Shown here one piece after another: positions 628 to 60,885 of a stretch of DNA of 64,000 nucleotides (within the stretch, counting starts at the first letter, position 1; the number at the start of each line of letters is the position of its first letter). The DNA comes from Macrostomum lignano (lineage: Eukaryota): positions 124,001 through 188,000 of the forward strand of contig NIVC01000428.1 in the NCBI GenBank assembly GCA_002269645.1, read 5' to 3'. The notes under the pieces were generated by a model, which was not told where the DNA came from, searched no databases, and saw only the letters and a list, made by a program, of their open reading frames with translations. Made by a program: the position numbers and the translations under genes.

Positions 628-20237
<19,610 letters not shown>

Positions 20238-25525: not shown

Positions 25526-26189
25526 TGTGACGAATAAAGCGGAAGACTTTGTGTAGCGGATAATTGGGATTAATCTACGATCCAGCAGATCAGCAGCCGA
25601 TTTTATCCTTAGCGTGAATTTGCAGATTTAGTATATTTGGATTGGTACTTGATTTGATGCGCCTAGCAAGGGCCGGTCAGGATTCAGTTGATTGGTGGGT
25701 GGGCTGAGGCAGGCGGTAGAGGGTTAAGGTAAAGAGGCCAGACAGCTAAGGGACCCGCAAGCTTAGAGCGAGAAGCGAAGCGACGAAGCAAAAGGAAAGA
25801 GCGGCCGCTGACTGCAAGTGTATTTTTATAATTGGTGAGTAAACAAGATAACAACAAGCTTAATCCAAAAACCAGACAAACCCCACTCAGGCAAAATGTA
25901 CATGTACAAATTAATCGATAAAGACATAAAGACAACGATAAATCGACAAGAATAACATACGTCAGTACATGTACATAGGTAGGACTACTTTACGATAAAT
26001 AATAACGATATGAATGAAATACAAATAATAGAATAAATACATAAGAGGCTACAAAAAACAAAGCAATTAACCGTAAAAATAGCGCGATAATAATACGTAC
26101 GAATATTGTTAAAATAAATGAAAGAAAACGGTATGCATATGAAAATAAAGAAATACGATACACGCGATTCTACGAATCACACTGTCACA
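25526..26189. mobile_element. Solo LTR (664 bp) with 4-bp TSD, Gypsy-like
   Basis: Begins TGTGAC (25526) and ends GTCACA (26189), giving TG...CA inverted termini; flanked on both sides by AATG (25522-25525, 26190-26193). Confidence 0.75.
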
Positions 26190-26759
26190 AATGCTGCATA
26201 AAAGTTTTTCATGAATACGCTACGTCGCTACTATATAGGCCTATAATTTGTGAACTGGTAGTTAGCTAGGGTTTTTGTTGATTGATATTATAATTTTTTA
26301 CCCAAATGATTAACTTTCTGTTTCTGATTTTTTAGGCTATTAATATATTTAATCATTTTTTTAGTAATTGTGAATAGGTCTCTAGGATAATAGATGAAGT
26401 TCATGGACATAGAAGGAGTGAAATATCGATAAGCCTAAGCCTAGCCTTACCCTCACCAAACAGCCAAAAAATTATGCTTTGCTTCATAAAATTGTCACTT
26501 GTCAAGTTTTGAATGTTTAGTGTTTGTTAAATATTTTTAGGCCTAACCATTTATTAGGCTAGAAAGATAGGCCTATCTATCTATTCTCCAATTGGCTATT
26601 GATGCAAAAAAAATTGACAAAATAAAAATTGCTTTTGCCCTTGCCCTTGTTACTTCTATAGAAGTAAAAGTCTAGTCCATAATATTTTTTTAAATATTAC
26701 TTAGTTGGACTTTAATTTAAACATATTTAATTTTAAGTCATTTTTTATATTAAAAGTTA

Positions 26760-27199
26760 GGCAGTTGTTATTCTTATGTTATTATGGTGACCATATAAAA
26801 AACAAAATAGTTATTTTTACAATTAACGCATAAGACACTATGCAGGCCTATGCTATGGTCTTTATTTAATGTAATTGTATAAATAACAAAACTGTTATTT
26901 TTATGATCATCATAGCCATAGGTAGGAAGCAAAATGGCTATTTTTATGGTCATGTAGAAGAAATTTTTGTTAAATTACAAGGTAATAGTTGACAATTACC
27001 TAAAGTAAGCTACCATGAAAAGAAGCACTAGAAGTTACCATTGTATTTATTAATAAAATGTTTCTTTATTTTTTAAATTTAACCATAATAGTATTGCATA
27101 GCAAGTTTATCACTTCATTTAGATGGTATTTGTTTTAAGTATTAACCATAAAAATAACTATTTCGCTATTTATATAGTCACGTAACAATAACAACTGCC
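26760..27199. mobile_element. Mutator-type MITE (440 bp) with 9-bp TSD
   Basis: Inverted termini GGCAGTTGTTATT / AATAACAACTGCC with about 60 bp of degenerate TIR; identical 9-bp flanks TAAAAGTTA at 26751-26759 and 27200-27208. Confidence 0.8.
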
Positions 27200-30000
27200 T
27201 AAAAGTTATGCCTAGATTATGATAATGAGGTAAAGGTAGAAAAATGGTTTTGGTTGTCATTGGAGCAGTGTGTTAATTTGAATTGCTACCTGCATTGAGT
27301 TTATACAAATCAAGCCAGAAAATTGTGTAGTCAAATCTCATTTTAACAAATTTTCTCCTGTGTACTCTGTTTACCAAGTCTTTAGTTCTAGGGGGAAAGT
27401 AGTCATTAGTCATAATTGTAGTCAAGTAGTCTATTCATTAGGCATAGTCATTCAAATTATTTCTCAAACACTATGATTTCAATGAAATCAATTTGTATAG
27501 GCCTAGATTGCATAGATGCTTACTAAGAGTAAAGTAGCATTACCACTATTGTAATTATTTATATATTATAAAACATTAATTTCTTAAAGCTTATTTGGAA
27601 TTGAGAACAGTTAGCTATTTTATGTCCCACAGGCAAATTACTCAAAATAGAACTATAGGCTTTTTGATCAAAGATTAAAATGCTTAAATGTTGTTTTGCA
27701 TATACTATTTATTAAGAGCAGATTAAGATTATGTTCAAATGGGACTATATGGCAATTCAATCACATTAGCACTACAGTGCACAGGGTTAAAAAATAAAAG
27801 CTGCTAGTAATTGATCCCAAGTTTAGAGCTAAACAAAATAGCAAAGAAAGTAAGTTCTGGTAAAGAAAATGAGTAATAAAAGAAAGAGAGTAAGAAAGAT
27901 AAAAATACGTAAGCAGTAAGAAAAAGTAAATAGATAAGTAAGAAAGAAAGATAAGATTGTTCTAATTATAGGCATAACTTTTGAATGAATTGACATTTTT
28001 ACCCAATTTAAAAAGCAAATCAACCATTAGATTTTTTTCTACTTATGACGCAAGTTGCATCAAATTCGAGTATTACAGTCAATCTCTGTATCAGTTTTTC
28101 CCACTATTTCTGGGACAACCCTCATAAAATGGTGGGTCACACACATAAATAGGTTAAGCAAAATCAGCACATGGACAAAGGGGCCTAAGGGATAGGAAGG
28201 GGGGGGGCAAATAGAAAATAGAACAATAGAGCTTTAGATGCTATGGCATTATAGCCTCTATATAAGAAACAACAAAAATCCTATAGGTTAACACTAGTTG
28301 GCAATTTGCTAAGTAGGTACCTCATTGCATACCAGAGGCAAGAGCCAGTGTGGTAGGTGGTGTTGACTGCTTAGGTGCTATGGCTAACTTAGAGGCAAGC
28401 TAAGCACTTAAACCTAGCCATCTTTGAATCAAAGCTTTTTGAGACATTTTTCAATGGCTGCATCCCAAAATACCCTTAGGCAAGATATCTAATTGTTGCT
28501 TAGCTAGTTGGCTTCCCAATAGGCAATAGCTAGCAAAAGAGCCAGCCTGGGCTGGGGTTGCCTTTCACCTTGGTGAAAACTCTCTTTTACCTATTAGAGT
28601 TGCTTTTCAAGAAAGTCTAGCATTTTGGCGAGGGGCATCTACTGGCAGAGACTCTGCCAGGGTTTATCAATCTAGACTCATCCCTTGCAGGCAGCTTGGT
28701 AGAAGGCCTCTTTGAAGGCCTGTTGCAATAGTGGCATAGGCATGTAGAAGCTCCATCTTGCCATATTGAAGCCAAGGGGCTCAAGCTGGAGGGGCCTCCT
28801 AATCTGCTTGTTGGGTTATAGTTTCTTGCATATTAATGTTTCTAGACATTTTGATGATGCTCAGACAGCTAATTAGCAGAATTAAAATCAGTTAGTGAGC
28901 AAACAAAAGGCACAGTTAGGCAAAATAATAAATAGATTGGGCTCAAAGGTAGCAAAGATAGAGCAATTTAATAAATAGGTAGACTATAGCAATGGTGGCA
29001 AGAAAACAAAGCATAGAAAATGAATGCAGTAAAAAATAAAAATTAGAATCACTTTAAATACTCATATGGCTAGCCAGTTATTAGATAAAAGGGTCTAACT
29101 AGTGGCCAATAGCCGTAAACCCCTATTGTGCACTCCAATTGAGGTTATGCCTAGAGATTGGGGTGTAGAAAAATCAAGGAGCAATACATAAAAATGACAT
29201 AAAATTTTTTTACATTTTATCGTAAAAATGATAAACCACTAAATAGGGGTGCAGTGTTGCCTGTTAGGATTTAGGCTACATGCTAGATCAATTAAAAAGA
29301 AAGGCCCCAATGGGCTCATATGAATGGAGGATTGTATGGGAGAAAAGAGCCATAGTGTTTTGTATAATATAAGTTTAGAAATTAGCCAAAATGACTATAA
29401 GGGAGCAACTCAAGGCTCCTTTACTAATATTAATAATAGCAAAAATAGATTGTATGATATTAACCAATATAGTAAGCATTGGTCTCTATAAGGAGTTATA
29501 TAAACAAAAAGGCAAAAAGGCACTGGGAAAATTTTCCTATGCTTTGGCTTGATTGAACTTAGATTGGGAGCCACTTTTCATCTCAAATGCCTTTATTGGG
29601 GACAAGGCCTTGAACAAAGAGCCTGACCCAAGTGTGGCAGAACCAATAGCAAAATAAAATGAATTGGTTAGAAGAAATTAATCTCTAGCTCATTAACAAA
29701 AAGCTAAGAAGGTTTACAAATAATTTAAATTTGCCTAATTACTGCTGAAAGGGAAAAGGTCTTTTAGCACTTTGACTATGTGCAAAGAGTGCACAGCAAA
29801 AAGGGGTTTCACAGAATTGAAGGGGTCAAATCATACAGTTATTGTAATATATGTAAATAAGTATTAGTGCAGAGGTGCAAGCTTACTATAATGCATCGCG
29901 TAAGCATGCACACAGAAGATAGATTTTTGCTTTTATCTAGAAAACTTAAAGACAATTAAAAAGGGGGAACTGCTTTTGTCTAAAAAGTATAAGAAAAAGG

Positions 30001-30200
30001 GAGCTGCTTTTACCCTCAAGCACAAGGTCACATTGAAAAGGAGAAACTGCTTTTACCCTCAAGCACAAGGTCACATTGAAAAGGAGAAACTGCTTTTACC
30101 CTCAAGCACAAGGTCACATTGAAAAGGAGAAACTGCTTTTACCCTTAAGCACAAGGTCACATTGAAAAAAAGAAAAACTGCTTTTACCTTTAAGCATAAG
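30001..30200 (+). repeat. 43-bp tandem repeat, about 4 copies plus degenerate copies
   Basis: CACAAGGTCACATTGAAAAGGAGAAACTGCTTTTACCCTCAAG at 30021, 30064, 30107 and ~30150. Confidence 0.85.
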
Positions 30201-30499
30201 GAAAAAACTAGTAGAAAATTAAAACATTTCTTTTATCCCAAAATCATAAGGAAACTTAACAAGGAATTGAAACATTGCTTTTATCCCAAAAGCATAAGGA
30301 AAATTGACAGAAAATTAAAAGAAACTATTTTCAACACTGAGCAGATGCAGAGAGCTTATAGCAGCAGAATAAAATTAGAGCATTTGTAATTTTAACTATT
30401 AGTAATAGTGCACAAAATAAATTAGCACTCAATGTGCACTTAAATTTTGCAGTTAATTATCTTAAATTTTGATTTCCATGCCAATCTCAAACAGATCCA

Positions 30500-30990
30500 G
30501 GTTGCCTTTGGCTAGCACCTCCAGATGGTATAAGCTTGTCTCAAATAGTTGGCTGCCTCAAACAGTTAGCTATGGCCTGCTGTTCCAAAGCAGGCTGATT
30601 GGCTAGGTCTACTTCGCTGTCTTTGCTTGACTTGTAAGTCAGCATTGGCTGCTCAGTTTGGTGCATTAGCTCCGAGCTCCAGTGGTCAGTCTGCTATCAT
30701 TTGTGGCACCTTGATAATGCTATTGTGATAGACTACTATTTTGGCTAGATGTCCTCATTGGGCTATTGCTGGCTTGATCTAGTAGGCCACTTGACCAACT
30801 TTCCTGACAATCTTATATATGCTCTTGTATAGCCAGTGGATTTTGGGCAGCTCTCCTAACTCAAGCTTTGGGTTGGCCAAGCAGACAAGGTCTCAGGGCT
30901 GCAGTTCCATGGCCTTTGGGTGGTTCTCATAATACTCCTCTTGGCATTGAGGCCAACTGGGGTCTAACAAGGCATGGATAGCCAGTGATA
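30500..30990 (-). mobile_element. Decayed Gypsy-like integrase C-terminal (GPY/F) fragment
   Basis: Minus-strand reading QEEYYENHPKAMELQP*DLVCLANP...YKIVRKVGQVAY*I resembles the Gypsy pattern QKxYYD...ELQPGDLV...GPYKVVRKVGxVAY; contains stops. Confidence 0.5.
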
Positions 30991-31231
30991 GGAAAAGCTA
31001 GAAGAAGTGATATGTTTGCTTTTTTCTATCTAAAAACAGCCATTTTTAATAAAAAGCCTGATAACTTTTTTATTCCTAAACCAAATTTTTAATTGAGATT
31101 ATTTTGGAAAGCTGTTATGGTTTAAAAGATGTATGAATTAAAAACATTTTTGAACTTTCAAAATCTTACGAGAGTCCTTATTCTAGGACTAAAAGAAAAG
31201 GGCATTGTTATTATTATAATATACTAGGCTA

Positions 31232-31472
31232 GGGCCTATATGTATATAAATCTCTAAGATCCATCTGTCTTTTTGTCTGTCTATCCCTTTAATATTTCAG
31301 TCTATAGCCTAAATGCCTAAGCCATTGTTATTAAATGCTAAGAAATTTTTTTGATTGTTTAAATGATCATTGTAGTTTGCTAAGGATACTAAGGAGCTAG
31401 TATCCAATAAAAGGAGATAAATGCTCTGACTTCTGAGGGGATAAATAAGAATTATCAAAGGAATAGTACTAG
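31232..31472 (+). mobile_element. Possible non-autonomous Helitron
   Basis: 5' (C)CTATATGTATATAAA...CTGTCT microsatellite-like start and 3' CTAG followed by T; the expected 3' hairpin is not clear. Confidence 0.3.
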
Positions 31473-31498
31473 TTGTAGACTAGGAATGATTGCAGACT

Positions 31499-32285
31499 GG
31501 CTCATTCCATATAAGATGGACATATTTGGAAAATAGAAAAAAGTCAATATTTTTGCTTGCCATTGCCTAATTAGCCTATTTTTTTAACCAAATCTTTATA
31601 TTGTGCAATATATACAATCTAAGAATAAAGGAATGGTAAAATGTTGGATTAGTATGTTATCAATTGGCAAAAAGTCATTTTTGTAAAAATTTGGACATTT
31701 TTCGAAGCAAAAGACATCATTAAGATTTTGTACCTTTTAAAAACAAATAGAAAGCTTTTGAAGGTTGAAACAAACTATAGATAAAAGTATAGTACTTGCA
31801 TCATCAGATAAAGGCATTGGTGACCAAATAATCTATTATATTTTTAATGCATTAGTACCTCAAAGTTACTGAATTGACAGAAAAAAATATGTTACGACCA
31901 TAATGTTACAACCATAAGGCTGCCTTTTCTTTTGTATCTTTGTTGCCTTTTGAGTTTATATATTCTAATAAAAGAGTATGATTTCTAAAGATGTTCTTAG
32001 TCAAATTTTAAAAATGTATTGCAAAATATCAAAAATGAAAAATGTTATAAGACTTTTACCTTTTAGTTTCTATATGTCAAAAATCCTGTCGTTACGACCA
32101 TAAGTGTCATTTAAGGTTTAATAGCATCTATACTAATGATGATATCTATATGAAACTCTATAAATATATTCTAGACAAAATAATCTTTCATTTAAAATAT
32201 TGGTTTAGTATATTCTATTATTAGATTTCATTTTATAAGTAAAAATAACCTGTCATGTTACGACCATGCTTATATGGAATGAGCC
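31499..32285. mobile_element. Non-autonomous DNA transposon (787 bp) with perfect 17-bp TIR and 4-bp TSD
   Basis: GGCTCATTCCATATAAG at 31499-31515 and its exact reverse complement at 32269-32285; GACT on both flanks (31495-31498, 32286-32289). Confidence 0.85.
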
Positions 32286-34122
32286 GACTACTAATAAGAA
32301 CTATAGATTTGAGCTAAGATAAATGAAGACAAGGAGGAAGCCACCTAGCATCTGCCACTATCAAAGAAGGCTAGATTGCAAAGGAGGCTTCTTGGAAACC
32401 AACTGATGAGTAGGCCATTGCCCTTGCAGATCTTGTTAAGAATTGGAGATTTTGTTACTTTTGTTACTTAACAATACAAGAAAAGGAGAAATGAAAAAGC
32501 AAAAAAGTAGTGAAAAAGGGAAAAAGAGAGGGGAAGAAAGAAGAGAGAACAGAAAAGAGAATAGACGAGAGGAAAGAAGAGAGGAGAGGAAATAAGGGAT
32601 AGAAAAGAAGATATTTGCCCTTGGCCTTGCCTATGTGGTCCCTGCAGCTTGATAAAGCAGTAGCACTTCATATAGTGGCTTAGGGCAGTAGGCCTATATG
32701 ACCTATAATAGTGATAATCATAATAATTGGTTCTTTTGTGCAATCCTATTTCTCCCCTTACTCTCATGTACCATTGCAGCATTTTATAGCCAATCAGAGC
32801 ATGGCTGCTTAGCAGAGTTGTACATGATGCATATGATGGTCACATGATCCTCATGGCTAAAAATACATATATATGAATCAGCAGATTTTGACCTTAGATT
32901 TCCTCCAACTTTTGAGGGCATCTTTTTGACTTTTAGGAGTCATATTTTGGAGCCCTCAGACCTACAGAAAGCTCTAATACCCAAACATCTCCCAAACCTT
33001 TGCCATTGCTTCTTATTAAATGATTCCTAATTTAAATATAATGAAAAGGAACAAACTGCCAATAAGTATCCAAGAAAAAAATAGATGTAGTAATGCATAA
33101 AATATGCTTTAAATAAAAATGAATGGAAATTGTTGCAAGCACAAAAAGCTATAAGGGCGCTATATTCATTTATACTTTAACCACTTGTCTACAACTTGCC
33201 CTTATATGTTCTTAATCTTTACTCTTGTCCTGAAATGTATCTGGTTTATATTTGTTTCATTCGATTGCAACGAAGTATGATAATATGTATGATAAAAAAG
33301 TATGATAAAAATTTGTAAACATTAAATGAAAAATTGATAAATTAGTATTGTAAAATGGTATTAAGCACAATTGTGTCAAAGGTGGTGGTATTACTTAGAA
33401 TTGGCTTTGCATGTACCACAAAAGAATTATATTTCTTTTTGTCATGCACTTAAAAGCTGCAATGCTCATGCTAAGGCAGCAATGATGATACCACTCGTGT
33501 CACTTATTGCACTTGATAGGATCTTCATCATCAAAGTAAGCTGTATGGCAGTAACACAAAAGGTCAAATGACACTGAAAAAATAGTGCTTTGACAAACAC
33601 TGTGTGAAACAGTGATTGGAAAATGTTGCATTTGACCACCTTTGAGACAGCAATGTAGGTGCAGATGCAGCTGAGTGACTGAGAAATGGCATATTGTTGG
33701 GTCAATCTTGTGATGCTCTTGCTCAGCCTAGAATTGGATGCCAACTGGATGATCGCAGCTCATACACCACAAGATTGCTAGTTACATTTGACAGTATTTG
33801 ACATCATAAACAGCCCGAATGAAAAGTACTTCTGAAAATTCATGCCAGCTGATAAATATCAATACTTAATAACAAACATTTTTGGTTTTGAAAGCTGCTG
33901 AATTTTGGAATAAATTTATTTGCAATGTGAAAAATCCCTCTTTAGCAACTAATTTTACACACTGAAATGAACAGTAGCAAGGACAATATTCTTGTCTGAA
34001 CTTTTCAGATACCAACTCGTGAACTCAGCATTGAACTGAATGAAAGCTATAAGCCACTTGATATACATGTTTGCAAACTGCAATTAGTCTAATCATCATC
34101 AATTAATAAAGCGATTAGTGTC

Positions 34123-37100
34123 ATGGTGCTTGGTCGCGCCTGGCGTTTCATCAAACGGCACCGCGGCAAGCTGGCTCTTGGCGGAGCTCTGGTTGGCGGC
34201 GGCGCCTACCTGCTGCACTGGTGGTGGCTCAGCCGCTCGGGCGGTCGCCGGGGCGCCGGCCAGGGCGACGACGAGGTGACGGCGCTGCTGTCCGAGCTGG
34301 AACGGGCGCAGTTTCTCCGTTCCACTGGTCGGAACTGTACAACCACCGTTGCCGCCCTGTTGCCGGGCATCGCAGCTCAGTTGGATGCTGATTTTGGCGT
34401 TGAGCAGGTGTGTGTTGGGGATGGGAGCTCAGCAGTAACAGGTGTGTGTTGGGGATGGGAGCTCAGCAGCAGTACATGTAGGTGTGTGTTGGGGATGGAA
34501 CTCAGCAGGTGTGTGTTGGGGATGGAAGTTCAGCAGCAGCAGGTGTGTGTTGGGGATGGGAGCTCAGCAGCAGCAGGTGTGTGTTGGGGATGGGAGCTCA
34601 GCAGCAGCAGGTGTGTGTTGGGGATGGGAGCTCAGCAGCAGCAGGTGTGTGTTGGGGATGGGAGCTCAGCAGCAGCAGGTGTGTGTTGGGGATGGGAGCT
34701 CAGCAGCAGCAGGTGTGTGTTGGGGATGGGAGCTCAGCAGCAGCAGGTGTGTGTTGGGGATGGGAGCTCAGCAGCAGCAGGTGTGTGTTGGGGATGGGAG
34801 CTCAGCAGCAGCAGGTGTGTGTTGGGGCTGGGAGCTTAGGTGTATTTGTTGTTAATTAGTGTATAAGGTACAGTTATGTCAAGCCTGCAGGTAACAAAAT
34901 TACGTCACCCCCTCCTTTGTTCCTGCTGCGCAGATCACGGCAGAGCTGCGCGCCAAACCGGCGCCAGATCGGCGCGCCGAGCTCTGCGACCAATTGCGCG
35001 CCCGCGCATTCGCCCGATTATTGGCCAGCGTCTATGCGGCCTGCGGCTCTTTGCTGTGCGCCCATGTCCAGCTGCACCTACTGGCTGGCCTGCTCTGCCA
35101 GCAGAAGCGGGACGCCGCCGGCGCCGCTGTTAATGAGGACGGCGACGCGTCTGATGGTCGGAATCGGCGGCAGCACGAGATCAGCGAGGAGGTGACTCTA
35201 CACTCTACAGGAATTCTAGCACGCCTCAAATACGAATCCACGCCCTCAAAGTCGTTTCAGAGTCGTAGACTTTTGGGCAACTCTTTGATGACATTTTGGC
35301 GACTTTTACCATGACATCTCGTCGTTTGAGAGTCACTTCTGTGCTATTTTACCGGGAGCACGAGAATTTGCCGCGAGAGTTTTTTACAGTCGGAATTTCA
35401 ATTCTAATCCTATATAAACAATAGTCTATAGACAATGCTGGACTAGATTAGAACTAGACTAGACTAGACATTAACTAGACTAGACTAAACTATACATTAA
35501 CTAGACTAGATTAAAACTAGACTAGACTAGACATTAACTAGACTAGATTAGAACCAGACTAGACTAGACTAGACATTAACTAGACTAGATTAGAACTAGA
35601 CTAGACTAGACTAGACATTAACTAGACTAGACTAGAATAGGCATTAAATAGACTAGATTAGAACTAGACAAGACTAGATTTAAAATCCGACTCTATTTCA
35701 CTTAAAATTCCAACTGGGAAACCCCTGCAGGAAAATCTCGGCGGGAAAACTTCCTGCGGAAAATCCTCATAGACCTATTTTACCTGCGTTATCTGCAACG
35801 ATTCTGGGGAGCTTCTTGGCCTGAGTAACCGTCTTCATCGGGGATGGGGAGCTCAACCAACAAGCGGTCGCCATAGGTGCCGCCCAGATTATCGTCTCCC
35901 CCCCTCACGCCGCAGGTGAAGATCCGGTTCCTCGGCCTGCTGGACACCCGGTCGCACGTGTCCGACCTGGCCGGCCAGCTGGAGTCGCACTGCCTGGCCG
36001 AATGCGCCGGCCTGGATGTCCGAGAGAAATTCGGCCTCCGCCGGCTGGACTCCCTGCTGCACCGGCTCCGCGTGGGCTTCGAGGCCAAGCTGCAAGCGCC
36101 CGAGTCGGACGCGGCCGCCTCGCCGGCTCCAGCGGCCCGCCTGCTGCCCAGCCTGCGCGACAGCCTGATGGACAGCCAGCGCCAGCTGCAGCGAGAAGCC
36201 GGCGACGACGGTCGCGGCCTTCAACGGGACGACCTGCTGCTCCAGCGGCTCTGCTCGGAGGCCGACGCCCGGCTCCGTTCCGTGGAGGCCGGCCGGGTGC
36301 TCAAGCAGCTGCTGGACTCTGCCGGCATGGCTCTGCTGCGAGTGTTCACCGCGCACTATCAGGTGGGTGTAACAGAGAACGCCTGTCAGCCTGTATGTGA
36401 CCTCGTGCGCTTGTGTGTCGCATTTTTGAGTCTCTCTGGCCTGAAGTTGCAGATTTATTGAAATCCCAAAAATCCCAATAGTTATTAAACTATCGATACT
36501 TTAAATGAGCTATTGAATATTTCGTTCCTTTCGTTAATAAGTCTTCTTTTTTGTGTACTTTAACTAATCATATGCGTTAAAAGCAGATTTCTGTATTCTC
36601 GTTTCTGTTCTTGCCTCTGACACGAAACTGGCCTCATTTAATTAATTGATAAGATTATTTGTTCACTTGGCAGAATAGACTGGATAGTCGCTCAGTTTGA
36701 GCAAACTCTGTCCCAGGCCAGGAAAAACTTTTGGCCGCTTCGGGCTTTCTAATAAATTCAGTGCACGTTTCAACTGTGAAGAGCAAATGCTCACTTTTGC
36801 TTGATGGCATTCTTGTAGAGGGCGCGGCCACATTAATTTGTTATGAAGGCCAAACCCTTAACATGCCTGACAATGAATGAGAAAGTCTGGGTCGCTGTCA
36901 CGAGTGGATGAGCGTGACTGCTTGCTCCTGCAAATCATTGCAATGTTTGTAACTAAATAACTGACCACCCACCCCCCCCCCACTGAATCCAGGGCCTCAA
37001 TTCAGACGCGTCCCTGCACGAGCGGACCCTGCCTCTGTTGAAGGTGCTGCCGCTGATCAACTCCACCGCCGCCCTGCTGCTGTCCCGCCAATTCTTGGAC

Positions 37101-42386: not shown

Positions 42387-42419
<33 letters not shown>

Positions 42420-45062: not shown

Positions 45063-47259
45063 TTGTTGAATTATATAGCTTTGGTACTCGACTATTAGCA
45101 ACTAAATATATAATGCAGCTAATCCTGGCTGAGTTATTGGTTTAATAATATTTTAGACCATAAAAATATTGTCGAGAGTATCATGAGGATTACTCAATCA
45201 GATTAGCACTTCACGATGAATCTTTTCTAATTCAAGTAGAACCGATGCCCCGTGTGTCTCCTTGCATTTGTTGTTTCTCTATTTTCGGCCATTATCAGCA
45301 GGGCTTCTGGTATTTGTAGTCCATTAAATGCAAGCGTATGGTAAGACGCTTTGTTGCCTTGCTTGGTTAAGTTTGCTATTTTGATGATCAGCTAATGAAT
45401 TTGAAAGCGTGTTTTGTTAGCAACATGACTGTATCCAGTTGAACAACTACCAGTATGATTGATTTTTGATCATGCATTTGTGCTGCAAAAATATTTTAAA
45501 TAAATCTGCTGGAACCAACGCCACTTTTCATTGAATGACCAACGACGTTGTCAAGTTATTACTGATGAAATTCTATCTCATACTCGTTTCAGGCTTTCGA
45601 TTCTTTTCACTTTCCGTTGAGGCTAATTCTATTCTGCTACATTCGGCTAACTCGGCGCATCATGTTCAGTTGGTTGTCAATATATATTTAACAAGTCGTG
45701 GAAAAATTCGGTTCCCTGTTTTGTCTTTGATTGTATGAGTGGTTACGGTAGCTAGCGGTAACTGTGGAAGAAGTAATGGAACACTAAGTGGGATTCCAGC
45801 CCACAGCTCAGCTTGGCTTCAATGAGAAGAATCAATTTCTTAGCACCTATGTCTTACAGACGCACATGTATGACGTCCATGTATTTGTGATCATTTTGAG
45901 CATTAGGCGTCGTATCACCATCGGCATCTGCCGGTAGTAGTTCCCTTATGGTTCTATGGTTTTGAGTTAGCAAATGACTGGGTAACGATAACGAAGCCAT
46001 GATGATGTAGCCCGACATGTACTATATATAGCCAAGAACATTTTGATTTTGATTGTCAAAAGTGTTATAGAAGACAGTAGCCAGTTCGAAATAGGCCCGT
46101 AGTAAGTGGAATTTGCAGGATTCACAAACCAATTATCATACTCGGAATGTGAACGTCTCGGATAAGTAAAAGTTCTTTTTGATATTTTAGTTTTCTCTAA
46201 AACACGAACACGATACAAGCGTAAAGTGGCGCCAATTGAATTTGCACAACTAACCATACTCTGAATCTTGAACTATAGAGTTGACATGAAGTTGGCATGA
46301 ATTAAAAATAAAGCGCCTTTATAATGAAAATCCGCATCGTTTTGGAATTGGAATTTAAGGCTTGAGCTTTCAAGGGATGCAAGAGATCTGTTTAAATTAT
46401 AAAACAAGGGCAAGAAGGCGAATATCCAGGGTTTATATTATGCAATTTTCAGCAGTAGTCCGATTTACTGTACCGTATACCATCATATCATTGTTTGGCT
46501 TTACTTTTGATTCGGCCTAGGCCTATATAAAACTCGGGTCTGGAACTATGACTGTCATGGTCATGGCTTATGACGCGTGTCTAACTGTTAAGTTTGGCAT
46601 ACTTTTATTATTCAGAGAGCGGGATTATTATTCTGCAGCTTGCGCATGACATGATCGCATCACACCTTTGTCTTGGCATAAGCCATAGGTTAACCAAAAG
46701 ACCAGTTAATAGACTATTTTCACCTGAGTTAATTCCCTAGATTTTTGTGATAGGCCTGGCCGCCTGGGCAAAATTATATTATATTAATAGCATTTAGCCT
46801 ATGACTAGGCCTATGTCTCTATGTATGAATATGATTACAGTATTTATTTTTGAAATTGGTCTATAGACCTAGCTTAGGCTATTGGAGCTTGTATTACTAT
46901 TAGGATGATAATGACTAAATGATAATGATTTAGTTTTATATTTAGCAGATTTTGCTAGCTCCAGGCTTAACATTGTCATTGATTAGGCCTAGGCCTAGGC
47001 CTATAATTATGTGTAACTAGATAGGCCTACATTTGTAACTAAGTATTAATAAATAGTAATTTTATTTTTGTATTTTTCTTTACTTAATCTTGGCCTATGA
47101 AGTGTGATATCTTGGCTATTGTCTAAAGTCTTAAACTTTAGAAATATTGTAATTATAACTTTGAAAGCCTAACTAAAAATAAAATTACATTAAGTACAGT
47201 TATACTAAAAATCTAGATCAATCTTAGACTTAATTTAAGTAAAAAATGCTATATAAGTA

Positions 47260-48582
47260 TGAGGGCTGCTTAATAAGTTTGCAGAAAATACCATTTTTGC
47301 TTATCCGATTTGCCCAAAATTTTACCTGCATAAGCATTAACCTAATGACATTTCTCAACATAATTTCCAGCCATTCCACACATTTTTCATGCAATGAAAC
47401 CAAGCTTCAAAACAGTGTCTCAATTCCAACTGTGAGACACTCTCCAGCTTAGTTCTTAATGTGTTTTTTAGCTCTTGATGGCAGCCAAATCGCTTTCCTT
47501 TCAAGTTCTTCTTGATCCTAGGAAGAAGAAAAAGTCAGAGGGCGCAAGGTCTGGTAAGTAAGCCGGATGTGGCAACAGTGTCAGCTGAGTTGACTGGAGA
47601 AACTGCTAGGTCACCCTGCCGCAATGCGCAGGTGCATTGTTGTGGTACAGCAGAATCCCGCATTCTTTCATCTTTGGATGCTGCTAAGTGAGACTTTCAA
47701 GCACTTGCAACAGACAGACGGTTGAGTACCATTCATCAGTCACTGTGGCACCATCTTCAAGCAGCACGTATGGCAGGATGCCACATTGTCTGAAGAAAAC
47801 TGCTGCTATGACTTTCTCGACACTGCTCGCAACAAAACTTGATGGGCACATCCTCTTCTCTTGCAATCCATTGCTGGCTCTGCTCTTTGGTTTCTAGGTC
47901 GTAAAAGTAGACCCAGGTTTTGTCACCAGTTATTATGTTATCTACCAGTTTTGAGCTTGTGCATCAAACTTTTTGAGCATTAAGCTTGAGAACTCGACCC
48001 AAGCCTGCATCTGGTTCAGGTCCAGGTGGTGAGGGACCCAGTGTTTGGATACTTTCCTCATGCCAAGGTGATCATGCAAGATAGAAACAATGCTTAAATC
48101 CAAAATCCCCACACTTTTCTCAAGTTCTCGAACCATTGTATGTGTCTGTCCTTGTCCAGCAGCATCTAGACAGTAGCCACAGTTGTGTCAGTATTCAGTA
48201 ATGGCCACATTTGGACAACCTTCCTGGTCATCATTGTCCAGAGACACAGAGCTGCAGCAAAAGTGAGTGAACCACTTGTGGACCATCATCAGAGATAGGG
48301 CTTCATCGCCAAGGGCCACTTGAAGTGTCTGCATGCACTCAGAAGTGGACTGGTCAAGATGAAATTGGATGAGAATCGTGACTAGTCTATCTTGATCAGT
48401 GAGACTCAGTGCAACCTGTGGAGTTTCACTGCTTCTTTGGCCACTGCGTTGCAGCATTTTAGCCAATCAAGCTGAAATTTTGCACAGCTATTATGAATAT
48501 ATGGGGGAAGTATTGTGTCAAATTTTGTGAGAATTGGGCAAAGGAAAATGGGATTTTCTGTAAACTTATTAGGTAGCCCTCA
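47260..48582 (-). mobile_element. Full-length (1323 bp) inactivated mariner transposon
   Basis: TIRs TGAGGGCTGCTTAATAAGTTTGCAGAAAAT (left) and the reverse complement of TGAGGGCTACCTAATAAGTTTACAGAAAAT (right), each flanked by TA. Transposase relic on minus: HKWF, WVPHHL, IITGDKTWVYFYD, YHNNAPAH, HPAYLPDLAPSDF, with stops and frameshifts. Confidence 0.93.
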
Positions 48583-49398
48583 TATAATTAAATATTTAAT
48601 ATATTTAGATTTTGGTAGGCCTATAAATTATTTTTAGAATTTATATATTATCTAAGTCTTAAGAAAAGCATATAAAGTCAAGTTGATTGTTATTTTTAAT
48701 TTAAATTTAAGATTAATGAAGCTATATTTAAATAAATACCTTAAAAGGGCCTATGGACTATATGAGTAGGCCCCTGTTCTAAAAATTTTAGCTTTGTAGT
48801 ATTTTTGCTATAAATATATAATATGACTAGGCCTATAATAATGTTTTATTATTACTTAGCGTAGCAGGTACAAATCTATAAAACTTTAAATGGGATACAT
48901 ATTATTGAAGCATATTTGCCTTTGATTATTTATTCATATAAAAAAACATAATAACTTATATAAAAATAAAAAATCTACCTCAAAGGGAAATATGCCTTAA
49001 TTGAGGTTTATGCCTCCCTCTAAATCTGCTTAGCTACAGACTAGCTTTAGCATAGAGCTTGATCTTAAATAATTCAATATTTTAACCAAAGTAAAATGTG
49101 CTCTAGTATAAGTATATCCAAAATTTACTAACAGGATCTATATAAAATAAATTATATAAAAGTTTTAAAGTTCAAATAGGCCTCTAAATAGTTACATAAA
49201 CCCAATGCATAGCTATTTCTAAATATTTACATCCTTATGATCCATTTCTCCTTTCAGAAACCTTTGCCTTGCTAGAGCATCTTAGAACTGATTTTTCATT
49301 CCACATCACTCCTTTCTCCATATCCAATCTGCATTGACTGAGCTGAGCTCTTCAACACACATCTAGGCAAATCCCCACTAAACCTGCCGCGCTCCACA

Positions 49399-56516: not shown

Positions 56517-59248
56517 TCACAGGGCCGGCGGCAGCAACGGCTTGAAGTAGTTGGTGATCAGCTGAGCCGACGGCGAGGCCGCCGCCGGATCTCCGACGCC
56601 GCGAACACGGTCGGGCGTGCCGCCACTGAACAGCTTCGATTGTCGCGAGACTCGCCGCCGCTTAGCAGACTGCGGCTGCTGCTGGTTGACGAGCTGCAGC
56701 GGCCGGAGCGGCGAGTGCGCGGCAGTCGGCGACGGCGACTTCATAGCCGGGCGCTTCGACAGCCGGCGATTCGGCGTGTTGGTCGAATCGCGCAGCATTG
56801 ACAGCGGCGGCGGAGGAGTGGATGGAGGCGTCAGCGCCGGCTGCTGCAGCAGGGTCAGCTGTCGGCGCTGCGGGCTTTGATGCGGATTCGGGCGCGAGAA
56901 AGCGGCCGAAGGCGCCGCCAGGGTGGCCGACAGGAATTTGCGGATGTTCATCTGACGCTGCTGGCCAGTTGACGACGCCGAAAGCTTCGTCTGAAACGTC
57001 GGCGTCGACGATGACGACACGGCGGTGGGCCACCGGCAGCTCCAACAGCCGTCGCCGCTGCCGCTATCAGCCAAGGAGGCCAGGGCGCGCAGCCGGACTC
57101 GTTCAGCCTCGGCCGCTGGGCCCTCCATCTCCCAGTGCCGGCGGCGGCGGAGGCGCCACAGTCGCACGGTGCAATCGTCGGACAGCGTGGCCAACCGGAG
57201 CGGATCGCAGTTGCCCGGACACCAGACGGCCACGGGCACTTCGGCGTCGAAGCCGGACAGCAGAGCCGGCGGCTGGCCCGCCTGCTGCCAGTCGGTGGCG
57301 TACAGGGCCACCCGACAGTCGTTGCTACCGGCGGCCAGGAAGCGGCCGTCGGGGCTGACGCTGACTCGCGAGTAGAAGGCGTCAACCCGGTGCTGGCCGC
57401 GGTACACTGCGCTGGGCTCGGGCCGCAGCATCAGCGGCCGGAACTCGTAGACCGCGGAGTCCAGACAGCTGGCGAACAGGCGGCCCCTGTCGAAGGCCAG
57501 GTGAGAGTAGCCGTGCGGCTTGCCCGGCCCCGGGTAGGCCAGGATTTGCCGAGGCGTCAGCGGCTTCGGCGCCGACACGGACGAACGACGGCGTCGAGGC
57601 GTCAAGGCGCCCGATCCTGAGGCTGACAGGGCGCGGATGTCCCACAGTTGGATGACGCCGTCGGCCGCGCCGCAGGTGGCCAGACTGTTCGAGTCGATGA
57701 ACACCGCGCAGGTGACGCTGCTGGCGCCGCCACCTCCGCCACTGCTGGCCCCGACGGTCGCATGACTTCGCCGACGCCTGGCAGCGGTGGATGATGAAGC
57801 CGCACGTCGAGACGCGGCGCTGCTGCCGCTGCCGATAACAGGGCCACCGGCGTGGGCGTCAGGAATGACGCCGACGGAGCCGCCAGGAGTTCGCGAGTCC
57901 CACAGCCGTACTGTGCCGTCGCGCGAGCTGCTGCAGAACTGGCCGCCACTGGCCGGCTCGCCTGGCCGACAGCTGAGGCTCTTCACCGAGCTCGTGTGGC
58001 CATTGAAGGCGCGAATCTCGCGACGGTCCAGGCACGAGTGCAAGCGCACCTGAGGTTAGAGGCAGAATTAAAAGTTTTTTAGTATTCATTTCGCAATGGA
58101 AATGCTAAATTCCAAGAAATGCCAAGAACCTACAAACAGGTAGGTTGTTACCCCCTCCCTGAGCCTTCAGTAGGCTGCTACCCCCTCCCTGAGCCTTCAG
58201 TAGGCTGCTACCCCTTCCCTGAGCCTTCAGTAGGCTGCTACCCCCTCCCTGAGCCTTCAGTAGGCTGCTACCCCCTCCCTGATCCTTAAGTAGGCTGCTA
58301 CCCCCTCCCTGAGCCTTCAGTAGGCTGTTACCTAACCCCTGAGCCTTCAGTAGGCTGTTACCTAACCCCTGAGCCTTCAGTAGGCTGTTACCTAACCCCT
58401 GAGCCTTCAGTAGGCTGTTACCCCCTCCCTGAGCCTTCAGTAGGCTGCTACCCCCTCCCTGATCCTTCAGTAGGCTGCTACCTCCTCCCTGATCCTTCAG
58501 TAGGCTGCTACCTCCTCCCTGATCCTTCAGTAGGCTGCTACCCCCTCCCTGATCCTTCAGTAGGCTGCTACCTCCTCCCTGATCCTTCAGTAGGCTGCTA
58601 CCCCCTCCCTGATCCTTCAGTAGGCTGCTACCCCCTCCCTGATCCTTCAGTAGGCTGCTACCCCCTCCCTGATCCTTCAGTAGGCTGCTACCTCCTCCCT
58701 GATCCTTCAGTAGGCTGCTACCCCCTCCCTGATCCTTCAGTAGGCTGCTACCCCCGATGCAGCAGACCCTGCCCTAGCAGACCAAGCAGCAGCAGACCCC
58801 ATCCCCTGATACTTCAATCACTCACAGTTTTATCCCCAGACGCAGTCAACAGCTGGTCGGCACTATCTGCCATCCATTGCACATCAAAAATGGCATTCCG
58901 ATGCGCCCGCCAGGCCGTCAACAGGCCGGAGCCGGCTGGCAGCTCCGTGTCCATCAGCAGGACGCCGCCTTCCTCGTCGCCAACAGGTAGCAGGCTGGGC
59001 CGGTCGGGCCGCTTGCAGAAATCGGCCTGCATCGGCGGCACCCGCGGACTGACGTCGCCGGCCACCTCGAGAGTGTCGGACCAGGCCAGCTCCAGGTGGG
59101 ACAGGAATTCGGTTGGGAACGGCCGCGCGCTCAGGCTGTCCGACATTGACAAGGCCGAAGGCAGCGGGCCAAGTGGCCGACGGAGCAGCGAAGCGAAAAC
59201 TCTGGGGCACTGCAGCTTGGCATCAGCCAGGCTGTGTTTGTTGTGCAT
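56517..59248 (-). CDS. DTL: Denticleless/CDT2, WD40 substrate receptor of CRL4 (~651 aa)
   Basis: Exons 59248-58826 and 58049-56517. DEEGGVLLMDT...WRAHRNAIFDVQW...LLTASGDKT, GHTSSVKSL...SRDGTVRLWDSR, GYSHL...LFASCLD, FYSRVSVSPDGRFLAAGSND, WCP...LATLSDDCTVRLWRL, then a Ser/Pro/basic tail ending QLITNYF. Confidence 0.92.
58141..58755 (+). repeat. 30-bp minisatellite (TAGGCTGCTACCCCCTCCCTGAGCCTTCAG)n in the DTL intron
   Basis: About 20 near-identical copies. Confidence 0.93.
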
Positions 59249-59992
59249 GTCTGTCTGCCCACAGACTGGGGAGGGGGCTGGCTGGAGGGGTGTGAGATGT
59301 GGTTATCAATTAGTGTCTTGAGGTTGTGTTTAAAACACATGTTCCAGGTTAACATGCTATCAAAGACTACACTGTCGTGTCATGTGTTTTAAGAACTTCT
59401 TACTAACTGTGCATGGATTGCACAGTGTTATGCATTTTTGCTGCAGTAGCTAACATACCATACATGTCTTTTGTCTAGTAACCTCATAACTTGTAATATC
59501 ATAACTAAGCAATAATAAGACATACTAGAATCAAATAGTTAATATGCTATTTTACTAGATAGAAGTCAAAGACATCTAATACTAGGCTTAGTTATGCAGA
59601 AATTATGCCCTTTCAATATCCTAGACTTTGAAAATCCTGGGATTCTTAGGATTGAGATATCCCAGACTTTGCCAATCCTGTAATCCTGACAAATTGGGCT
59701 AGGATCCCAGGATCCTGGGATTAAAAAAGGCTAATCTGTTGGTGCAATTTTGGTTTACAAAGCTATCTTCTTTGAAAACAAAGAAAAATATTATGCCAAC
59801 AAAAAACTGACAATGAGCTTTTGAATTAGAGTGTGACATATAGGCAGGCATAATAAATATACTTTTTTATATGCCAATATCAACTTAGGAAAATCACACT
59901 TGATTATAATGTAACCTGGGGAATAATTGATTACAAAGCTATGGCCCAAGATACTAATACTAGGGTAAAAAGGATCAGACCTTATCCTCCTA

Positions 59993-60348
59993 TTTATTAG
60001 AGGCAGGGGGGTTGTGTGCAGCCTGGCGCACTTTAAGCGACATAGGCACACAACCGGCGAGAGGCATTACTGCCCATTCCGCCGACTCCCCTGAGCAGGC
60101 ACACAAGCGCGCGGATATGTACGCAGGCACACTCACACAGGAGTGTACAGCGGCCCTAACTTTATTTTATCGTTAGGCATGTACACTTCACTGCACCTTG
60201 GGGGGTTGGCTCTCAAGGCTGTTAATTGCACGAGCAGAGCCAAGCCGAGATTCCAATTCAGCCCCAAATTAATGTGACTGCACTTGGAATCAAGCCTGGG
60301 TCGCTGGCACACCAGAGCCTGCACTAGACCGCTGGGCTACGCCCCCCC
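59993..60348 (-). mobile_element. tRNA-derived SINE, copy A (~356 bp)
   Basis: Minus-strand head GGGGGGCGTAGCCCAGCGG (A-box-like) ... GGCTTGATTCC (B-box-like); AATAAA tail; 11-bp TSD TTATCCTCCTA at 59982-59992 and 60349-60359. Confidence 0.85.
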
Positions 60349-60885
60349 TTATCCTCCTACTCCTAGGAGCATTTGCCCTAGATAGAGAATTGGTAGCTTA
60401 GATTTTGGTCTAATAGCAAGGTTCCATTGTTCTTAGCCTTGGCTAAGGAGTTTTAAAAGTAGGGAGTCAGGGACTACTTAAGGTATTTTACTATCCTAAT
60501 GCTTTTTACTGGGGTAAGCCACTAGCTAGATATCTAAAAGGTCTCTTAACAGTGCTAAGAATAAGGTCTTTCCTATATGGGGGCTTTTGATCTGTGCAAG
60601 GTTAAGAGTTAAGACCCCTTGATTTTAGCTAGGTTTGAGGTAGAGGGAAAGTTCAAATAAACAATTATTTGACTCCTGTCTGGCAAGTTCTAGTGCTATA
60701 ATAAAAAACAATAAGGAATTGGCTTTTATTGCTTTAGGCTCTATGCATAGGTTTTAGAATATAGTTTACTAATATTATGTATACACTTACATAGGCCCTC
60801 TCTATATATTTATTATACCTAAAATCTAACAATTTTCTAATAGGCCTAGCTTCAGTCTTGTATCCTTACAATCTTAGCCTTCTCA

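What the first reader, a model, noticed from the sequence alone, without database searches (positions are those of the whole stretch)
26200..33900. RIP-like hypermutated compartment: TE graveyard stripped of CpG and enriched in TpA
Seen: about 7.7 kb with almost no CG and abundant TA/TAG/CTA, made of nested TE relics, with sharp transitions to CpG-rich exons (also at 46.4-49.3 kb and 59.3-64 kb). Intronic tandem repeats such as TCCTAATCCCGAGC and TAGGCATCGCCC keep their CpGs. Knowledge: fungal RIP gives C>T with a CpA/TpG preference, while animal 5mC decay is mainly CpG-limited. Inference: a TE-targeted cytosine methylation/deamination system acting on dispersed TEs but sparing tandem arrays, which differs from fungal RIP.
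Basis: partly seen in the sequence, partly recalled or inferred. Interest (0 to 1): 0.8.

Follow-up and report, generated by a model that had tools for sequence, protein, structure and literature searches.

The report
CpG-stripped transposon graveyard in flatworm
A 7.9-kb stretch between genes of the flatworm Macrostomum lignano consists of decayed mobile elements that have lost about 87% of their CG dinucleotides, most likely because this DNA, unlike the neighbouring genes, was methylated in the germ line and methylated cytosines mutate to thymine; it does not carry the signature of fungal RIP.

Summary
Window 26,227-34,111 has 29 CpGs where 220 are expected (o/e 0.13). Its edges are sharp: o/e 1.62 just left of it, and PEX3 exon 1 just right of it. 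Two similar blocks lie at 46,657-49,387 and 59,195-64,000. The window is Macrostomum lignano (contig NIVC01000428.1), a flatworm reported to keep DNMT1 and DNMT3.

The blocks hold transposon relics: the tail of an LTR-retrotransposon pol gene, a foldback element, a mariner with its inverted repeats, and a young and an old copy of a short retroposon. Most of block 1 is unclassified, and nesting was not shown.

At the same G+C (0.32 against 0.35), AT-rich DNA in the CpG-normal parts of the window keeps its CpG (0.84 against 0.17). Exons have o/e 1.02. RIP indices fail: (CpA+TpG)/(ApC+GpT) is 1.4-1.55 and the composite index is negative.

Polarised comparisons show near-saturated CpG-to-TpG/CpA change (14 of 15 sites in the pol relic). 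CpA-to-TpA is a weaker second class. There is no strand clustering.

Tandem arrays keep CpG because they lie in the CpG-normal parts, not because they are tandem.

Best reading: CpG methylation directed at transposon-rich DNA, followed by deamination, with gene bodies spared. This is a known process in an unusual animal pattern. Moderate interest.

The parts
26227..34111 (.). CpG-poor block 1, the finding itself. G+C 0.335, 29 CpGs against 220 expected.
25727..26226 (.). Left flank. AT-rich (G+C 0.35) but CpG-rich (o/e 1.62). It shows that AT-richness alone does not remove CpG.
26757..27202 (.). Foldback or MITE-like element. The arms are 78-87% complementary. The ends read TA|GGCAGTTG...CAACTGCC|TA.
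   Evidence: sequence
29961..30320 (.). CpG-free minisatellites (43-bp and 48-bp units). They lie just 3' of the pol relic on its strand and may be the element's 3' non-coding part.
30465..30949 (-). Relic of the last ~150 codons of an LTR-retrotransposon pol gene (integrase C-terminus). It runs through three reading frames and has four in-frame stops. It is cut off upstream at about 30,950-30,990.
   Evidence: family domains
34123..34400 (+). PEX3 exon 1 (Peroxin-3, a weak Pfam match). The CpG-rich compartment starts about 10 bp before its ATG.
46657..49387 (.). CpG-poor block 2 (o/e 0.22). It lies between the last PRMT5 exon and the Myb/SANT gene.
47232..48611 (-). Mariner-type DNA transposon relic, 1,380 bp. 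It has ~95-bp terminal inverted repeats (74% identical) and many stop codons. CpG o/e is 0.27; the flanks have 0.07.
   Evidence: (HTH_48 and Transposase_1, both below Pfam cut-off)
59195..64000 (.). CpG-poor block 3 (o/e 0.27), upstream of the DTL-like WD40 gene. It runs off the end of the window.
59993..60349 (-). Young copy of a ~355-bp dispersed repeat. It has an exact 13-bp target-site duplication, CCTTATCCTCCTA. G+C 0.56, 17 CpGs. The strand is only a guess.
60885..61237 (+). Old copy of the same repeat, 85% identical to the young copy, with a decayed duplication. G+C 0.48, 7 CpGs. The strand is only a guess.

Best explanation
The block is transposon-derived spacer DNA of Macrostomum lignano. 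Over evolutionary time it was methylated at CpG in the germ line, or in the stem cells that give rise to it. Exons, the DNA between them, and other CpG-normal DNA were not.

5-methylcytosine deaminates to thymine. Each inserted element, CpG-rich when young, therefore loses its CpGs to TpG/CpA many times faster than it changes elsewhere. A general AT-biased mutation pressure, which also acts outside the blocks, drives G+C down to about 0.3.

Shown here:
- the block-specific CpG loss;
- its direction and its near-saturation;
- its dependence on age;
- the absence of CpG hypermutability in genes.

Inferred:
- that the cause is 5mC laid down by DNMT1/DNMT3;
- that transposon sequence or chromatin state directs it;
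- that it acts in germ-line cells.
For: 1. Organism. A 1,344-aa exon is 100% identical to BOX15_Mlig020540g3 on contig NIVC01000428.1 of GCA_002269645.1. Reviews state that M. lignano keeps DNMT1 and DNMT3 and has low global 5mC (PMC11292947; PMC9246332; PMC10658182).

2. Same base composition, different CpG. Symmetrised CpG o/e is 0.17 (bootstrap 0.10-0.22) in the blocks, at G+C 0.32. It is 0.84 (0.75-1.00) in non-tandem AT-rich DNA outside the blocks, at G+C 0.35. In GC-rich exon-like DNA it is 1.02.

3. Polarised decay in the pol relic, compared with three proteins of its own family.
- There are 23 G:C>A:T transitions, 1 A:T>G:C transition and 11 transversions.
- Mutated sites by context: CpG 14/15, CpA 8/50, CpT 0/32, CpC 1/38, A:T 1/169.
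- Typical changes are Arg to Cys, His, Gln, Trp or stop.

4. Age series.
- The young repeat copy has an exact 13-bp target duplication and CpG o/e 0.61.
- The old copy 540 bp away has o/e 0.35. In the well-aligned core it has lost 11 of 15 CpGs and differs by 34 G:C>A:T against 5 A:T>G:C changes.
- The mariner relic has o/e 0.27, and the surrounding unclassified DNA 0.04-0.07.

5. Genes show no CpG hypermutability.
- CpG columns in intronic arrays vary no more than other columns.
- Arg differs at 6 of 231 positions (2.6%) between the lipoprotein gene and its paralogue. The average is 79 of 2,502 (3.2%).

6. The ratio of non-CpG C>T to T>C is about 4:1 both in the old repeat copy (0.145 against 0.037) and in the tandem arrays outside the blocks (0.0060 against 0.0015). 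The AT drift is therefore not specific to transposons.
Against: - No methylation data were available. 5mC in these blocks is inferred, not seen.
- TpG/CpA is not raised as simple CpG decay predicts: 1.09 in the blocks against 1.15 in the control. This needs onward CpA-to-TpA loss, or a different starting composition.
- The CpG-poor DNA reaches to within about 10 bp of the PEX3 and Myb-gene start codons. The promoters would then lie in formerly methylated DNA, which is unusual.
- In the repeat pair the contrast between CpG and non-CpG is only about 3-fold. A CGCGCG cluster survives in both copies.
- All of this rests on one 64-kb window, two small polarised samples, and an assumed ancestral state.
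Confidence: 0.72

Rival explanations
1. Methylation is the default, and active genes are protected from it. All DNA is methylated unless something linked to transcription excludes DNMTs. The blocks are then CpG-poor because they are untranscribed spacer, not because they are transposons.
For: - All three blocks lie between genes, and two of them end within about 10 bp of a start codon.
- Unclassified AT-rich DNA in the blocks is the most depleted part, at o/e 0.04-0.07.
- Exons, the DNA between them and 3' flanks are all CpG-normal.
Against: - The 20.2-26.2 kb stretch has no gene in the record's annotation, yet it is mostly CpG-normal. Only a patch at 22.5-23.5 kb (o/e 0.51) is depleted, and it carries the same TAGGCCTA motif as the blocks. 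That looks patchy and sequence-directed.
- No transcription data were available, so the two models cannot be separated here.
Confidence: 0.15
2. A RIP-like or other non-CpG cytosine deamination system hypermutates dispersed repeats, C-to-T with a CpA preference.
For: - C>T at CpA is the second most frequent class in both comparisons. In the repeat pair it is 13/59, against 11/107 at CpT plus CpC (Fisher p 0.06). In the pol relic it is 8/50 against 1/70 (p 0.004).
- ACA/TGT is mutated at 8 of 18 sites in the pair.
- The tandem arrays outside the blocks show no CpA preference: 9/1,664 against 18/2,861.
- WCA trinucleotides are about 17% lower, and ATA and TTA 11-24% higher, in the blocks than in the control.
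- TpA o/e is 0.99 against 0.81.
Against: - (CpA+TpG)/(ApC+GpT) is 1.38-1.55, and the composite RIP index is -0.34 to -0.58.
- CpG, not CpA, is the saturated target (14/15).
- There are no strand-coordinated runs: 18 runs against 18.0 expected.
- The young copy is intact although an 85%-identical copy lies 540 bp away.
- Four of the eight 'CpA' events in the relic could have started as CpG codons (CCG, ACG).
- Six of the eight ACA events lie in CACACA runs.
- Much of the CTA/TAG excess comes from one motif, TAGGCCTA.
Confidence: 0.07
3. The elements were CpG-poor and AT-rich before they inserted, through intrinsic composition, foreign origin or editing of cDNA. There was then no decay in place.
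For: The blocks differ from the AT-rich DNA outside them in several dinucleotides besides CpG: GpC 1.66 against 1.39, CpC 1.23 against 0.93, ApG 1.19 against 0.98. Different ancestry therefore contributes to their composition.
Against: - Intact family members are CpG-rich. The young repeat copy has 17 CpGs at G+C 0.56.
- The family proteins have Arg where the relic has Cys, His, Gln, Trp or stop.
- The relics match M. lignano families at 61-78% amino-acid identity, so they are not foreign.
- G>A and C>T are balanced: 17 against 17 in the pair, and 15 against 8 in the relic. That argues against editing of one cDNA strand.
Confidence: 0.05

Closest known systems
Methylation-driven CpG decay of transposons (5mC deamination), as in vertebrate Alu and L1 copies and in plant heterochromatin
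   Same: - CpG is the main target, with transitions to TpG/CpA.
- Decay increases with the age of the copy.
- Young copies are CpG-rich.
- DNMT1 and DNMT3 are reported in the genome.
   Different: - Gene bodies, including the DNA between exons and the 3' flanks, are CpG-normal here. Vertebrates methylate gene bodies and spare only promoter islands.
- Here the CpG-poor DNA reaches the start codons.
Mosaic gene-body methylation of invertebrates (oyster, Ciona, annelids, insects)
   Same: The genome is divided into CpG-depleted and CpG-normal compartments with sharp borders.
   Different: - The polarity is reversed. Housekeeping-type genes (PRMT5, PEX3, DTL-like) have exon CpG o/e about 1.0, and the spacer and transposon DNA is depleted.
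- Reviews describe methylation of transposons in only some invertebrates (PMC11292947, abstract).
Repeat-induced point mutation (RIP) of Neurospora and other fungi, and the AT-rich transposon blocks it creates (for example in Leptosphaeria). Stated from my own knowledge.
   Same: - AT-rich blocks full of dead transposons alternate with GC-rich gene blocks.
- G:C>A:T transitions are overwhelming.
- Many stop codons are created.
- There is a secondary CpA-to-TpA class.
   Different: - The substrate index is high rather than low, and the composite index is negative.
- CpG is the saturated context.
- There is no strand clustering.
- A duplicated young copy has escaped.
- No sexual-cycle duplication sensing is known in animals.
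4mC marking of transposons in bdelloid rotifers by a horizontally acquired methyltransferase (as described in PMC11292947)
   Same: A spiralian lineage that directs cytosine methylation at transposons rather than at gene bodies.
   Different: - The chemistry differs (N4 rather than C5).
- Rotifers lack DNMT1 and DNMT3, and M. lignano keeps them.
- CpG-specific decay points to 5mC.

Membership tests
Fungal-type RIP | Substrate depletion: (CpA+TpG)/(ApC+GpT) low (about 0.75-1.03 or less) and composite index positive | tested here: not met
   The substrate index is 1.38-1.55 and the composite index is -0.34 to -0.58 in the blocks. The control DNA gives 1.31 and -0.46 (per-kb values).
Fungal-type RIP | Product excess: TpA/ApT clearly raised (0.89 or more, typically well above 1.15) | tested here: inconclusive
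   TpA/ApT is 0.97-1.05 in the blocks (bootstrap 1.00-1.11), against 0.85 (0.80-0.96) in the AT-rich DNA outside them. It passes the lenient threshold only. Part of the excess is due to the TAGGCCTA motif.
Fungal-type RIP | CpA is the preferred context of C>T | tested here: not met
   CpG is preferred: 14/15 and 14/34. CpA comes second: 8/50 and 13/59.
Fungal-type RIP | Mutations occur in strand-coordinated bursts and hit all sufficiently similar duplicated copies | tested here: not met
   The runs test gives 18 runs against 18.0 expected. The young copy is intact beside an 85%-identical copy.
Fungal-type RIP | A RID/Masc1 or DIM-2 type cytosine methyltransferase in the genome | not testable with these tools
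   The rest of the M. lignano genome could not be searched.
5mC deamination decay of methylated DNA | Strong CpG deficit relative to base composition, confined to the compartment | tested here: met
   CpG o/e is 0.13-0.27 in the blocks, 0.84 in the AT-rich DNA outside them and 1.02 in exons.
5mC deamination decay of methylated DNA | Directional CpG-to-TpG/CpA transitions at a rate far above other sites | tested here: met
   In the pol relic, 14 of 15 visible CpG sites are mutated, against 9 of 120 non-CpG cytosines and 1 of 169 A:T sites. In the pair, 11 of 15 CpG dinucleotides are lost.
5mC deamination decay of methylated DNA | Matching excess of TpG/CpA | tested here: inconclusive
   TpG/CpA o/e is 1.09 (1.01-1.15) in the blocks against 1.15 (1.07-1.21) in the control. 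By my own arithmetic about 1.3 was expected from the lost CpG.
5mC deamination decay of methylated DNA | DNMT1 and DNMT3 present in the organism | not tested
   Taken from reviews that cite Wasik et al. 2015. The primary paper was not held.
5mC deamination decay of methylated DNA | The compartment is actually methylated in germ-line cells | not testable with these tools
   No methylome data were available.
Invertebrate gene-body methylation | CpG depletion of the exons and introns of broadly expressed genes | tested here: not met
   Exon-like DNA has o/e 1.02. Array CpG columns are not hypervariable. Arg is not hypermutable between paralogues.
LTR retrotransposon (relic at 30,465-30,949) | Homology to a pol protein with protease, RNase H and integrase | tested here: met
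   - tblastn to P0028 and P0032 gives E 1e-38 to 5e-42, in three collinear frames.
- Relatives carry RNase_H (P0035) and Integrase_H2C2 (P0037).
- P0033 has a DTG protease motif and P0036 a zinc-finger plus DDE core, both by eye.
- The superfamily (Ty3 or BEL) is not resolved.
- No LTRs were found in the window.
Tc1/mariner DNA transposon (relic at 47,232-48,611) | Mariner transposase domains between terminal inverted repeats, about 1.3 kb long | tested here: inconclusive
   - HTH_48 (E 3.9e-4) and Transposase_1 (E 4.2e-3) hit in the right order, but both are below the Pfam cut-offs.
- The ~95-bp inverted repeats are 74% identical and the element is 1,380 bp long.
- A mariner-like part of P0034 matches at 30% identity.

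The most novel reading that the evidence does not exclude
Besides ordinary CpG methylation decay, a second process specific to the transposon blocks converts cytosine to thymine at CpA, especially at ACA in CA runs. It could be non-CG methylation by DNMT3 or an unknown deaminase. That would make this an animal counterpart of RIP-type genome defence.
Probability: 0.1. Interest if true: 0.8.

Novelty: new member of a known kind. Interest (0 to 1): 0.4.

Why it matters
Animal DNA methylation outside vertebrates is usually described as gene-body methylation. A 2022 review calls the pattern in free-living flatworms unknown (PMC9246332).

This window gives sequence-level evidence that in M. lignano the historical target was transposon-rich spacer DNA, and that gene bodies were spared.

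It would also explain the reported low global 5mC: the methylated compartment has already lost most of its CpGs.

The result gives exact coordinates for a direct methylome test. It also sets up a comparison of polarity with molluscs and annelids. It is one locus and indirect evidence, so it is a lead rather than a result.

Tried and rejected
- Pfam scans of the three minus-strand reading frames of block 1, and of seven fragments from both strands of it: nothing, not even for the pol relic. The other unclassified parts were translated but not scanned.
- Self-comparison for repeats shared between the three blocks: none. A within-window family spectrum was possible only for one pair.
- DNA of intact copies of the LTR family: P0028 is not on record in the contig index. 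Proteins from the later searches cannot be looked up. The spectrum was therefore inferred at codon level from proteins only.
- Homeologous DNA for a compartment-by-compartment divergence test: only the window's own contig was returned.
- A tRNA-derived SINE identity for the 355-bp repeat, suggested by an A/B-box resemblance recalled from memory: ARAGORN and Rfam found nothing. It is left unclassified.
- P0034 as an outgroup for the repeat pair: it covers only about 31 codons. Two of the three informative sites make the old copy the derived one.
- A tandem ~185-bp repeat around the GTTACGACCAT motifs: not supported.
- Link between the mariner ends and TAGGCCTA: the motif lies about 35 bp outside the inverted repeat, so there is no direct link.
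- The primary M. lignano genome paper (Wasik 2015) could not be read.
Full report
WHERE THE WINDOW COMES FROM
A 1,344-aa exon (10,956-14,990, minus strand) is 100% identical to 'hypothetical protein BOX15_Mlig020540g3 [Macrostomum lignano]'. That protein maps to contig NIVC01000428.1 of assembly GCA_002269645.1. The locus returned is the reverse complement of window 956-30,237, so window position equals record position minus 124,000.

The genes, by Pfam, are:
- a large vitellogenin/apolipophorin-like lipid-transfer protein on the minus strand (about 0.8-20.2 kb);
- PEX3 (from 34,123, plus strand);
- PRMT5 (40,364-45,062, plus strand);
- a Myb/SANT protein (from about 49.4 kb, plus strand);
- a DTL-like WD40 protein (about 55-59.25 kb, minus strand).

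Exons are 60-72% G+C. About a fifth of the window is minisatellite arrays, mostly between exons.

THE OBSERVATION
CpG positions define a block at 26,227-34,111. It holds 29 CpGs where 219.6 are expected (o/e 0.13). None of 2,000 shuffles fell below 181.

The borders are abrupt.
- Left: the 500 bp outside the block are AT-rich (G+C 0.35) and have o/e 1.62. The first 500 bp inside have 0.09.
- Right: CpG density resumes at 34,112, which is 11 bp before the PEX3 ATG.

Equivalent blocks lie at 46,657-49,387 (o/e 0.22) and 59,195-64,000 (o/e 0.27).

TpA is not in excess over base composition (o/e 0.91-0.99). It is higher than in the AT-rich DNA outside the blocks (0.81). CTA/TAG and above all CTAG are enriched: CTAG is 2.07 against 0.71.

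WHAT THE BLOCKS ARE MADE OF
Block 1 holds:
- a foldback element at 26,757-27,202;
- the last ~150 codons of an LTR-retrotransposon pol gene at 30,465-30,949 on the minus strand.

The pol relic was found with a homology search (P0028, M. lignano, E 1.7e-28). It was confirmed by tblastn as three collinear pieces in three reading frames, with four in-frame stops (E 1e-38 to 5e-42).

Relatives from an exhaustive HMMER search support the family assignment:
- P0035 carries RNase_H and P0037 carries Integrase_H2C2;
- P0033 has a DTG protease motif and P0036 an integrase core, both by eye.

No other part of the element is present in the window.

Block 2 holds a 1,380-bp mariner relic with ~95-bp inverted repeats and two sub-threshold mariner Pfam matches.

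Block 3 holds two inverted copies of a ~355-bp dispersed repeat, 85% identical to each other.
- The copy at 59,993-60,349 has an exact 13-bp target duplication.
- The other copy has a decayed duplication.

Most of block 1 could not be classified, and nesting was not shown.

IS IT RIP-LIKE?
I compared the blocks with non-tandem AT-rich DNA from the rest of the window, at almost the same G+C (0.32 against 0.35).

| Measure | Blocks | AT-rich DNA outside the blocks |
|---|---|---|
| CpG o/e | 0.17 (0.10-0.22) | 0.84 (0.75-1.00) |
| (CpA+TpG)/(ApC+GpT) | 1.38 (1.55 in block 1) | 1.31 |
| TpA/ApT | 1.05 | 0.85 |
| Composite RIP index | -0.34 (-0.58 in block 1) | -0.46 |

The substrate index should be low in RIP-mutated DNA, and it is high. 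The composite index should be positive, and it is negative. By the standard indices this is not RIP. The thresholds are from my own knowledge of the RIP literature.

POLARISED SPECTRA

(a) The pol relic against three proteins of its own family.
- 144 codons were compared and 43 have changed.
- The 35 unambiguous single-step changes are 23 G:C>A:T transitions, 1 A:T>G:C transition and 11 transversions.
- Mutated fraction of sites whose change would alter the protein: CpG 14/15, CpA 8/50, CpT 0/32, CpC 1/38, A:T 1/169.

(b) The repeat pair, taking the young copy as a proxy for the ancestor. Its intact duplication supports this choice, and so do two of three sites polarised by a third copy.
- Over the longer alignment span: 38 G:C>A:T transitions against 6 the other way. 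By context: CpG 14/34, CpA 13/59, CpT 7/50, CpC 4/57.
- In the well-aligned core: 34 G:C>A:T transitions, 5 A:T>G:C transitions and 3 transversions.
- 11 of 15 CpG dinucleotides are destroyed.
- C>T and G>A number 17 each and are not clustered by strand: 18 runs against 18.0 expected.

(c) Background from 15 tandem arrays outside the blocks, counting singleton variants against each array's consensus.
- C>T at CpA is 0.0054, at CpT 0.0076 and at CpC 0.0047. T>C is 0.0015.

Three points follow.
- The roughly 4:1 bias of C>T over T>C is the same in the arrays and in the old repeat copy. The AT drift is therefore general.
- CpG hypermutability is specific to the blocks. In the arrays outside the blocks, CpG columns vary no more than their neighbours. 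Arg residues are not hypermutable between the lipoprotein gene and its paralogue P0030: 6/231 against 79/2,502 overall.
- A CpA preference appears in both transposon comparisons (Fisher p 0.004 and 0.06) but not in the arrays.

It has caveats.
- The counts are small.
- Four of the eight relic events may have begun as CpG codons.
- Six of the eight ACA events in the pair lie in CACACA runs.
- Array variants are an imperfect neutral standard.

TANDEM ARRAYS
Only 2 of the 15 arrays profiled have a CpG in their unit. Those two lie where non-repetitive DNA also keeps its CpG. The arrays inside block 1 have no CpG. Location decides, not tandem structure.

INTERPRETATION
The simplest account is germ-line CpG methylation directed at transposon-rich DNA, followed by 5mC deamination. 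Gene bodies are unmethylated.

Reviews report that M. lignano retains DNMT1 and DNMT3 and has low global 5mC. They also say the genomic pattern in free-living flatworms is unknown.

The polarity is the reverse of the usual invertebrate gene-body pattern.

I cannot separate 'targeted at transposons' from 'default methylation with protection of transcribed DNA'. A CpG-normal, unannotated stretch at 20.2-26.2 kb contains one partly depleted, motif-bearing patch. This favours targeting.

Two things do not fit neatly:
- the expected TpG/CpA surplus is missing;
- the CpG-poor DNA abuts the start codons.

VERDICT
- The 'TE graveyard' is partly documented.
- The mechanism is most likely ordinary 5mC decay in an unusual compartment pattern, not RIP.
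- Novelty: a new instance of a known process.
- Interest is moderate. It rests on the reversed polarity and on the unexplained CpA component.

Noticed in passing
window 26,236; 26,538; 26,568; 27,498; 32,689; 46,806-47,022; 48,616; 48,828; 60,841-62,932 (22 sites). Also 22,695; 22,786; 22,862; 46,518.: - The 8-bp palindrome TAGGCCTA occurs 26 times in the window, 22 of them in the CpG-poor blocks.
- About 0.5 are expected under a first-order Markov model; the maximum in 300 simulations was 3.
- One site sits exactly at the left edge of block 1.
- The flanks are not conserved.
- (TAGGCC)3TA occurs at 46,984.
- Idea, unproven: it is the excision footprint (TA+GG+CC+TA) of a TA-targeting transposon with 5'-GG...CC-3' ends. 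The foldback at 26,757-27,202 has such ends (TA|GGCAGTTG...CAACTGCC|TA).
- Repeated insertion and excision would build the hexamer array.
   Followed up: partly
window 25,860-26,226: An AT-rich segment (G+C about 0.30-0.35) with a CpG excess: o/e 1.6 over 500 bp and 2.56 in 26,001-26,250. It lies directly against the CpG-free block. CGAT, ACGA and TACG are frequent. Its function is unknown; it may be a UTR.
   Followed up: no
window 31,895; 32,090-32,095; 32,261: The motif GTTACGACCAT recurs three times, about 180 bp apart. It holds 4 of the 29 CpGs left in block 1. The surrounding sequence does not align as a repeat.
   Followed up: partly
window 60,108-60,123 and 61,109-61,123: A CGCGCG cluster (AAGCGCGCGGATATGTACG) is kept in both the young and the old copy of the 355-bp repeat, while most other CpGs of the old copy are lost. 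It may be protected or functional.
   Followed up: no
window 10,900-10,960 (minus strand): The lipid-transfer protein reading frame is broken here. The annotated gene stops at 10,956, and the ORF continues in another frame (7,230-10,901). The paralogue P0030 reads straight through. This is either a frameshifted gene copy or an assembly indel. The VWD-domain ORF at 823-2,973 is probably the same gene's 3' end and is not annotated.
   Followed up: partly
whole window, e.g. 3,037-5,087; 17,267-18,447; 37,434-38,606; 39,322-40,185: Minisatellite arrays are very dense: more than 25 arrays with 12-43-bp units, about 21% of the window. Most lie between exons. They include a 2-kb array of a 43-bp unit inside the lipoprotein gene.
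   Followed up: no
protein P0034 (M. lignano, 3,732 aa), matching window 30,689-30,949; 47,969-48,352; 60,226-60,318; 60,913-61,038: One database 'protein' contains pieces of the LTR pol, a mariner-like transposase and the 355-bp repeat. It looks like a gene model run through a transposon cluster elsewhere in the genome. It shows that all three families are dispersed.
   Followed up: partly
window 22,500-23,500: A partly CpG-depleted patch (o/e 0.51) with three TAGGCCTA motifs inside otherwise CpG-normal DNA. It may be a small transposon island of the same kind as the blocks.
   Followed up: no
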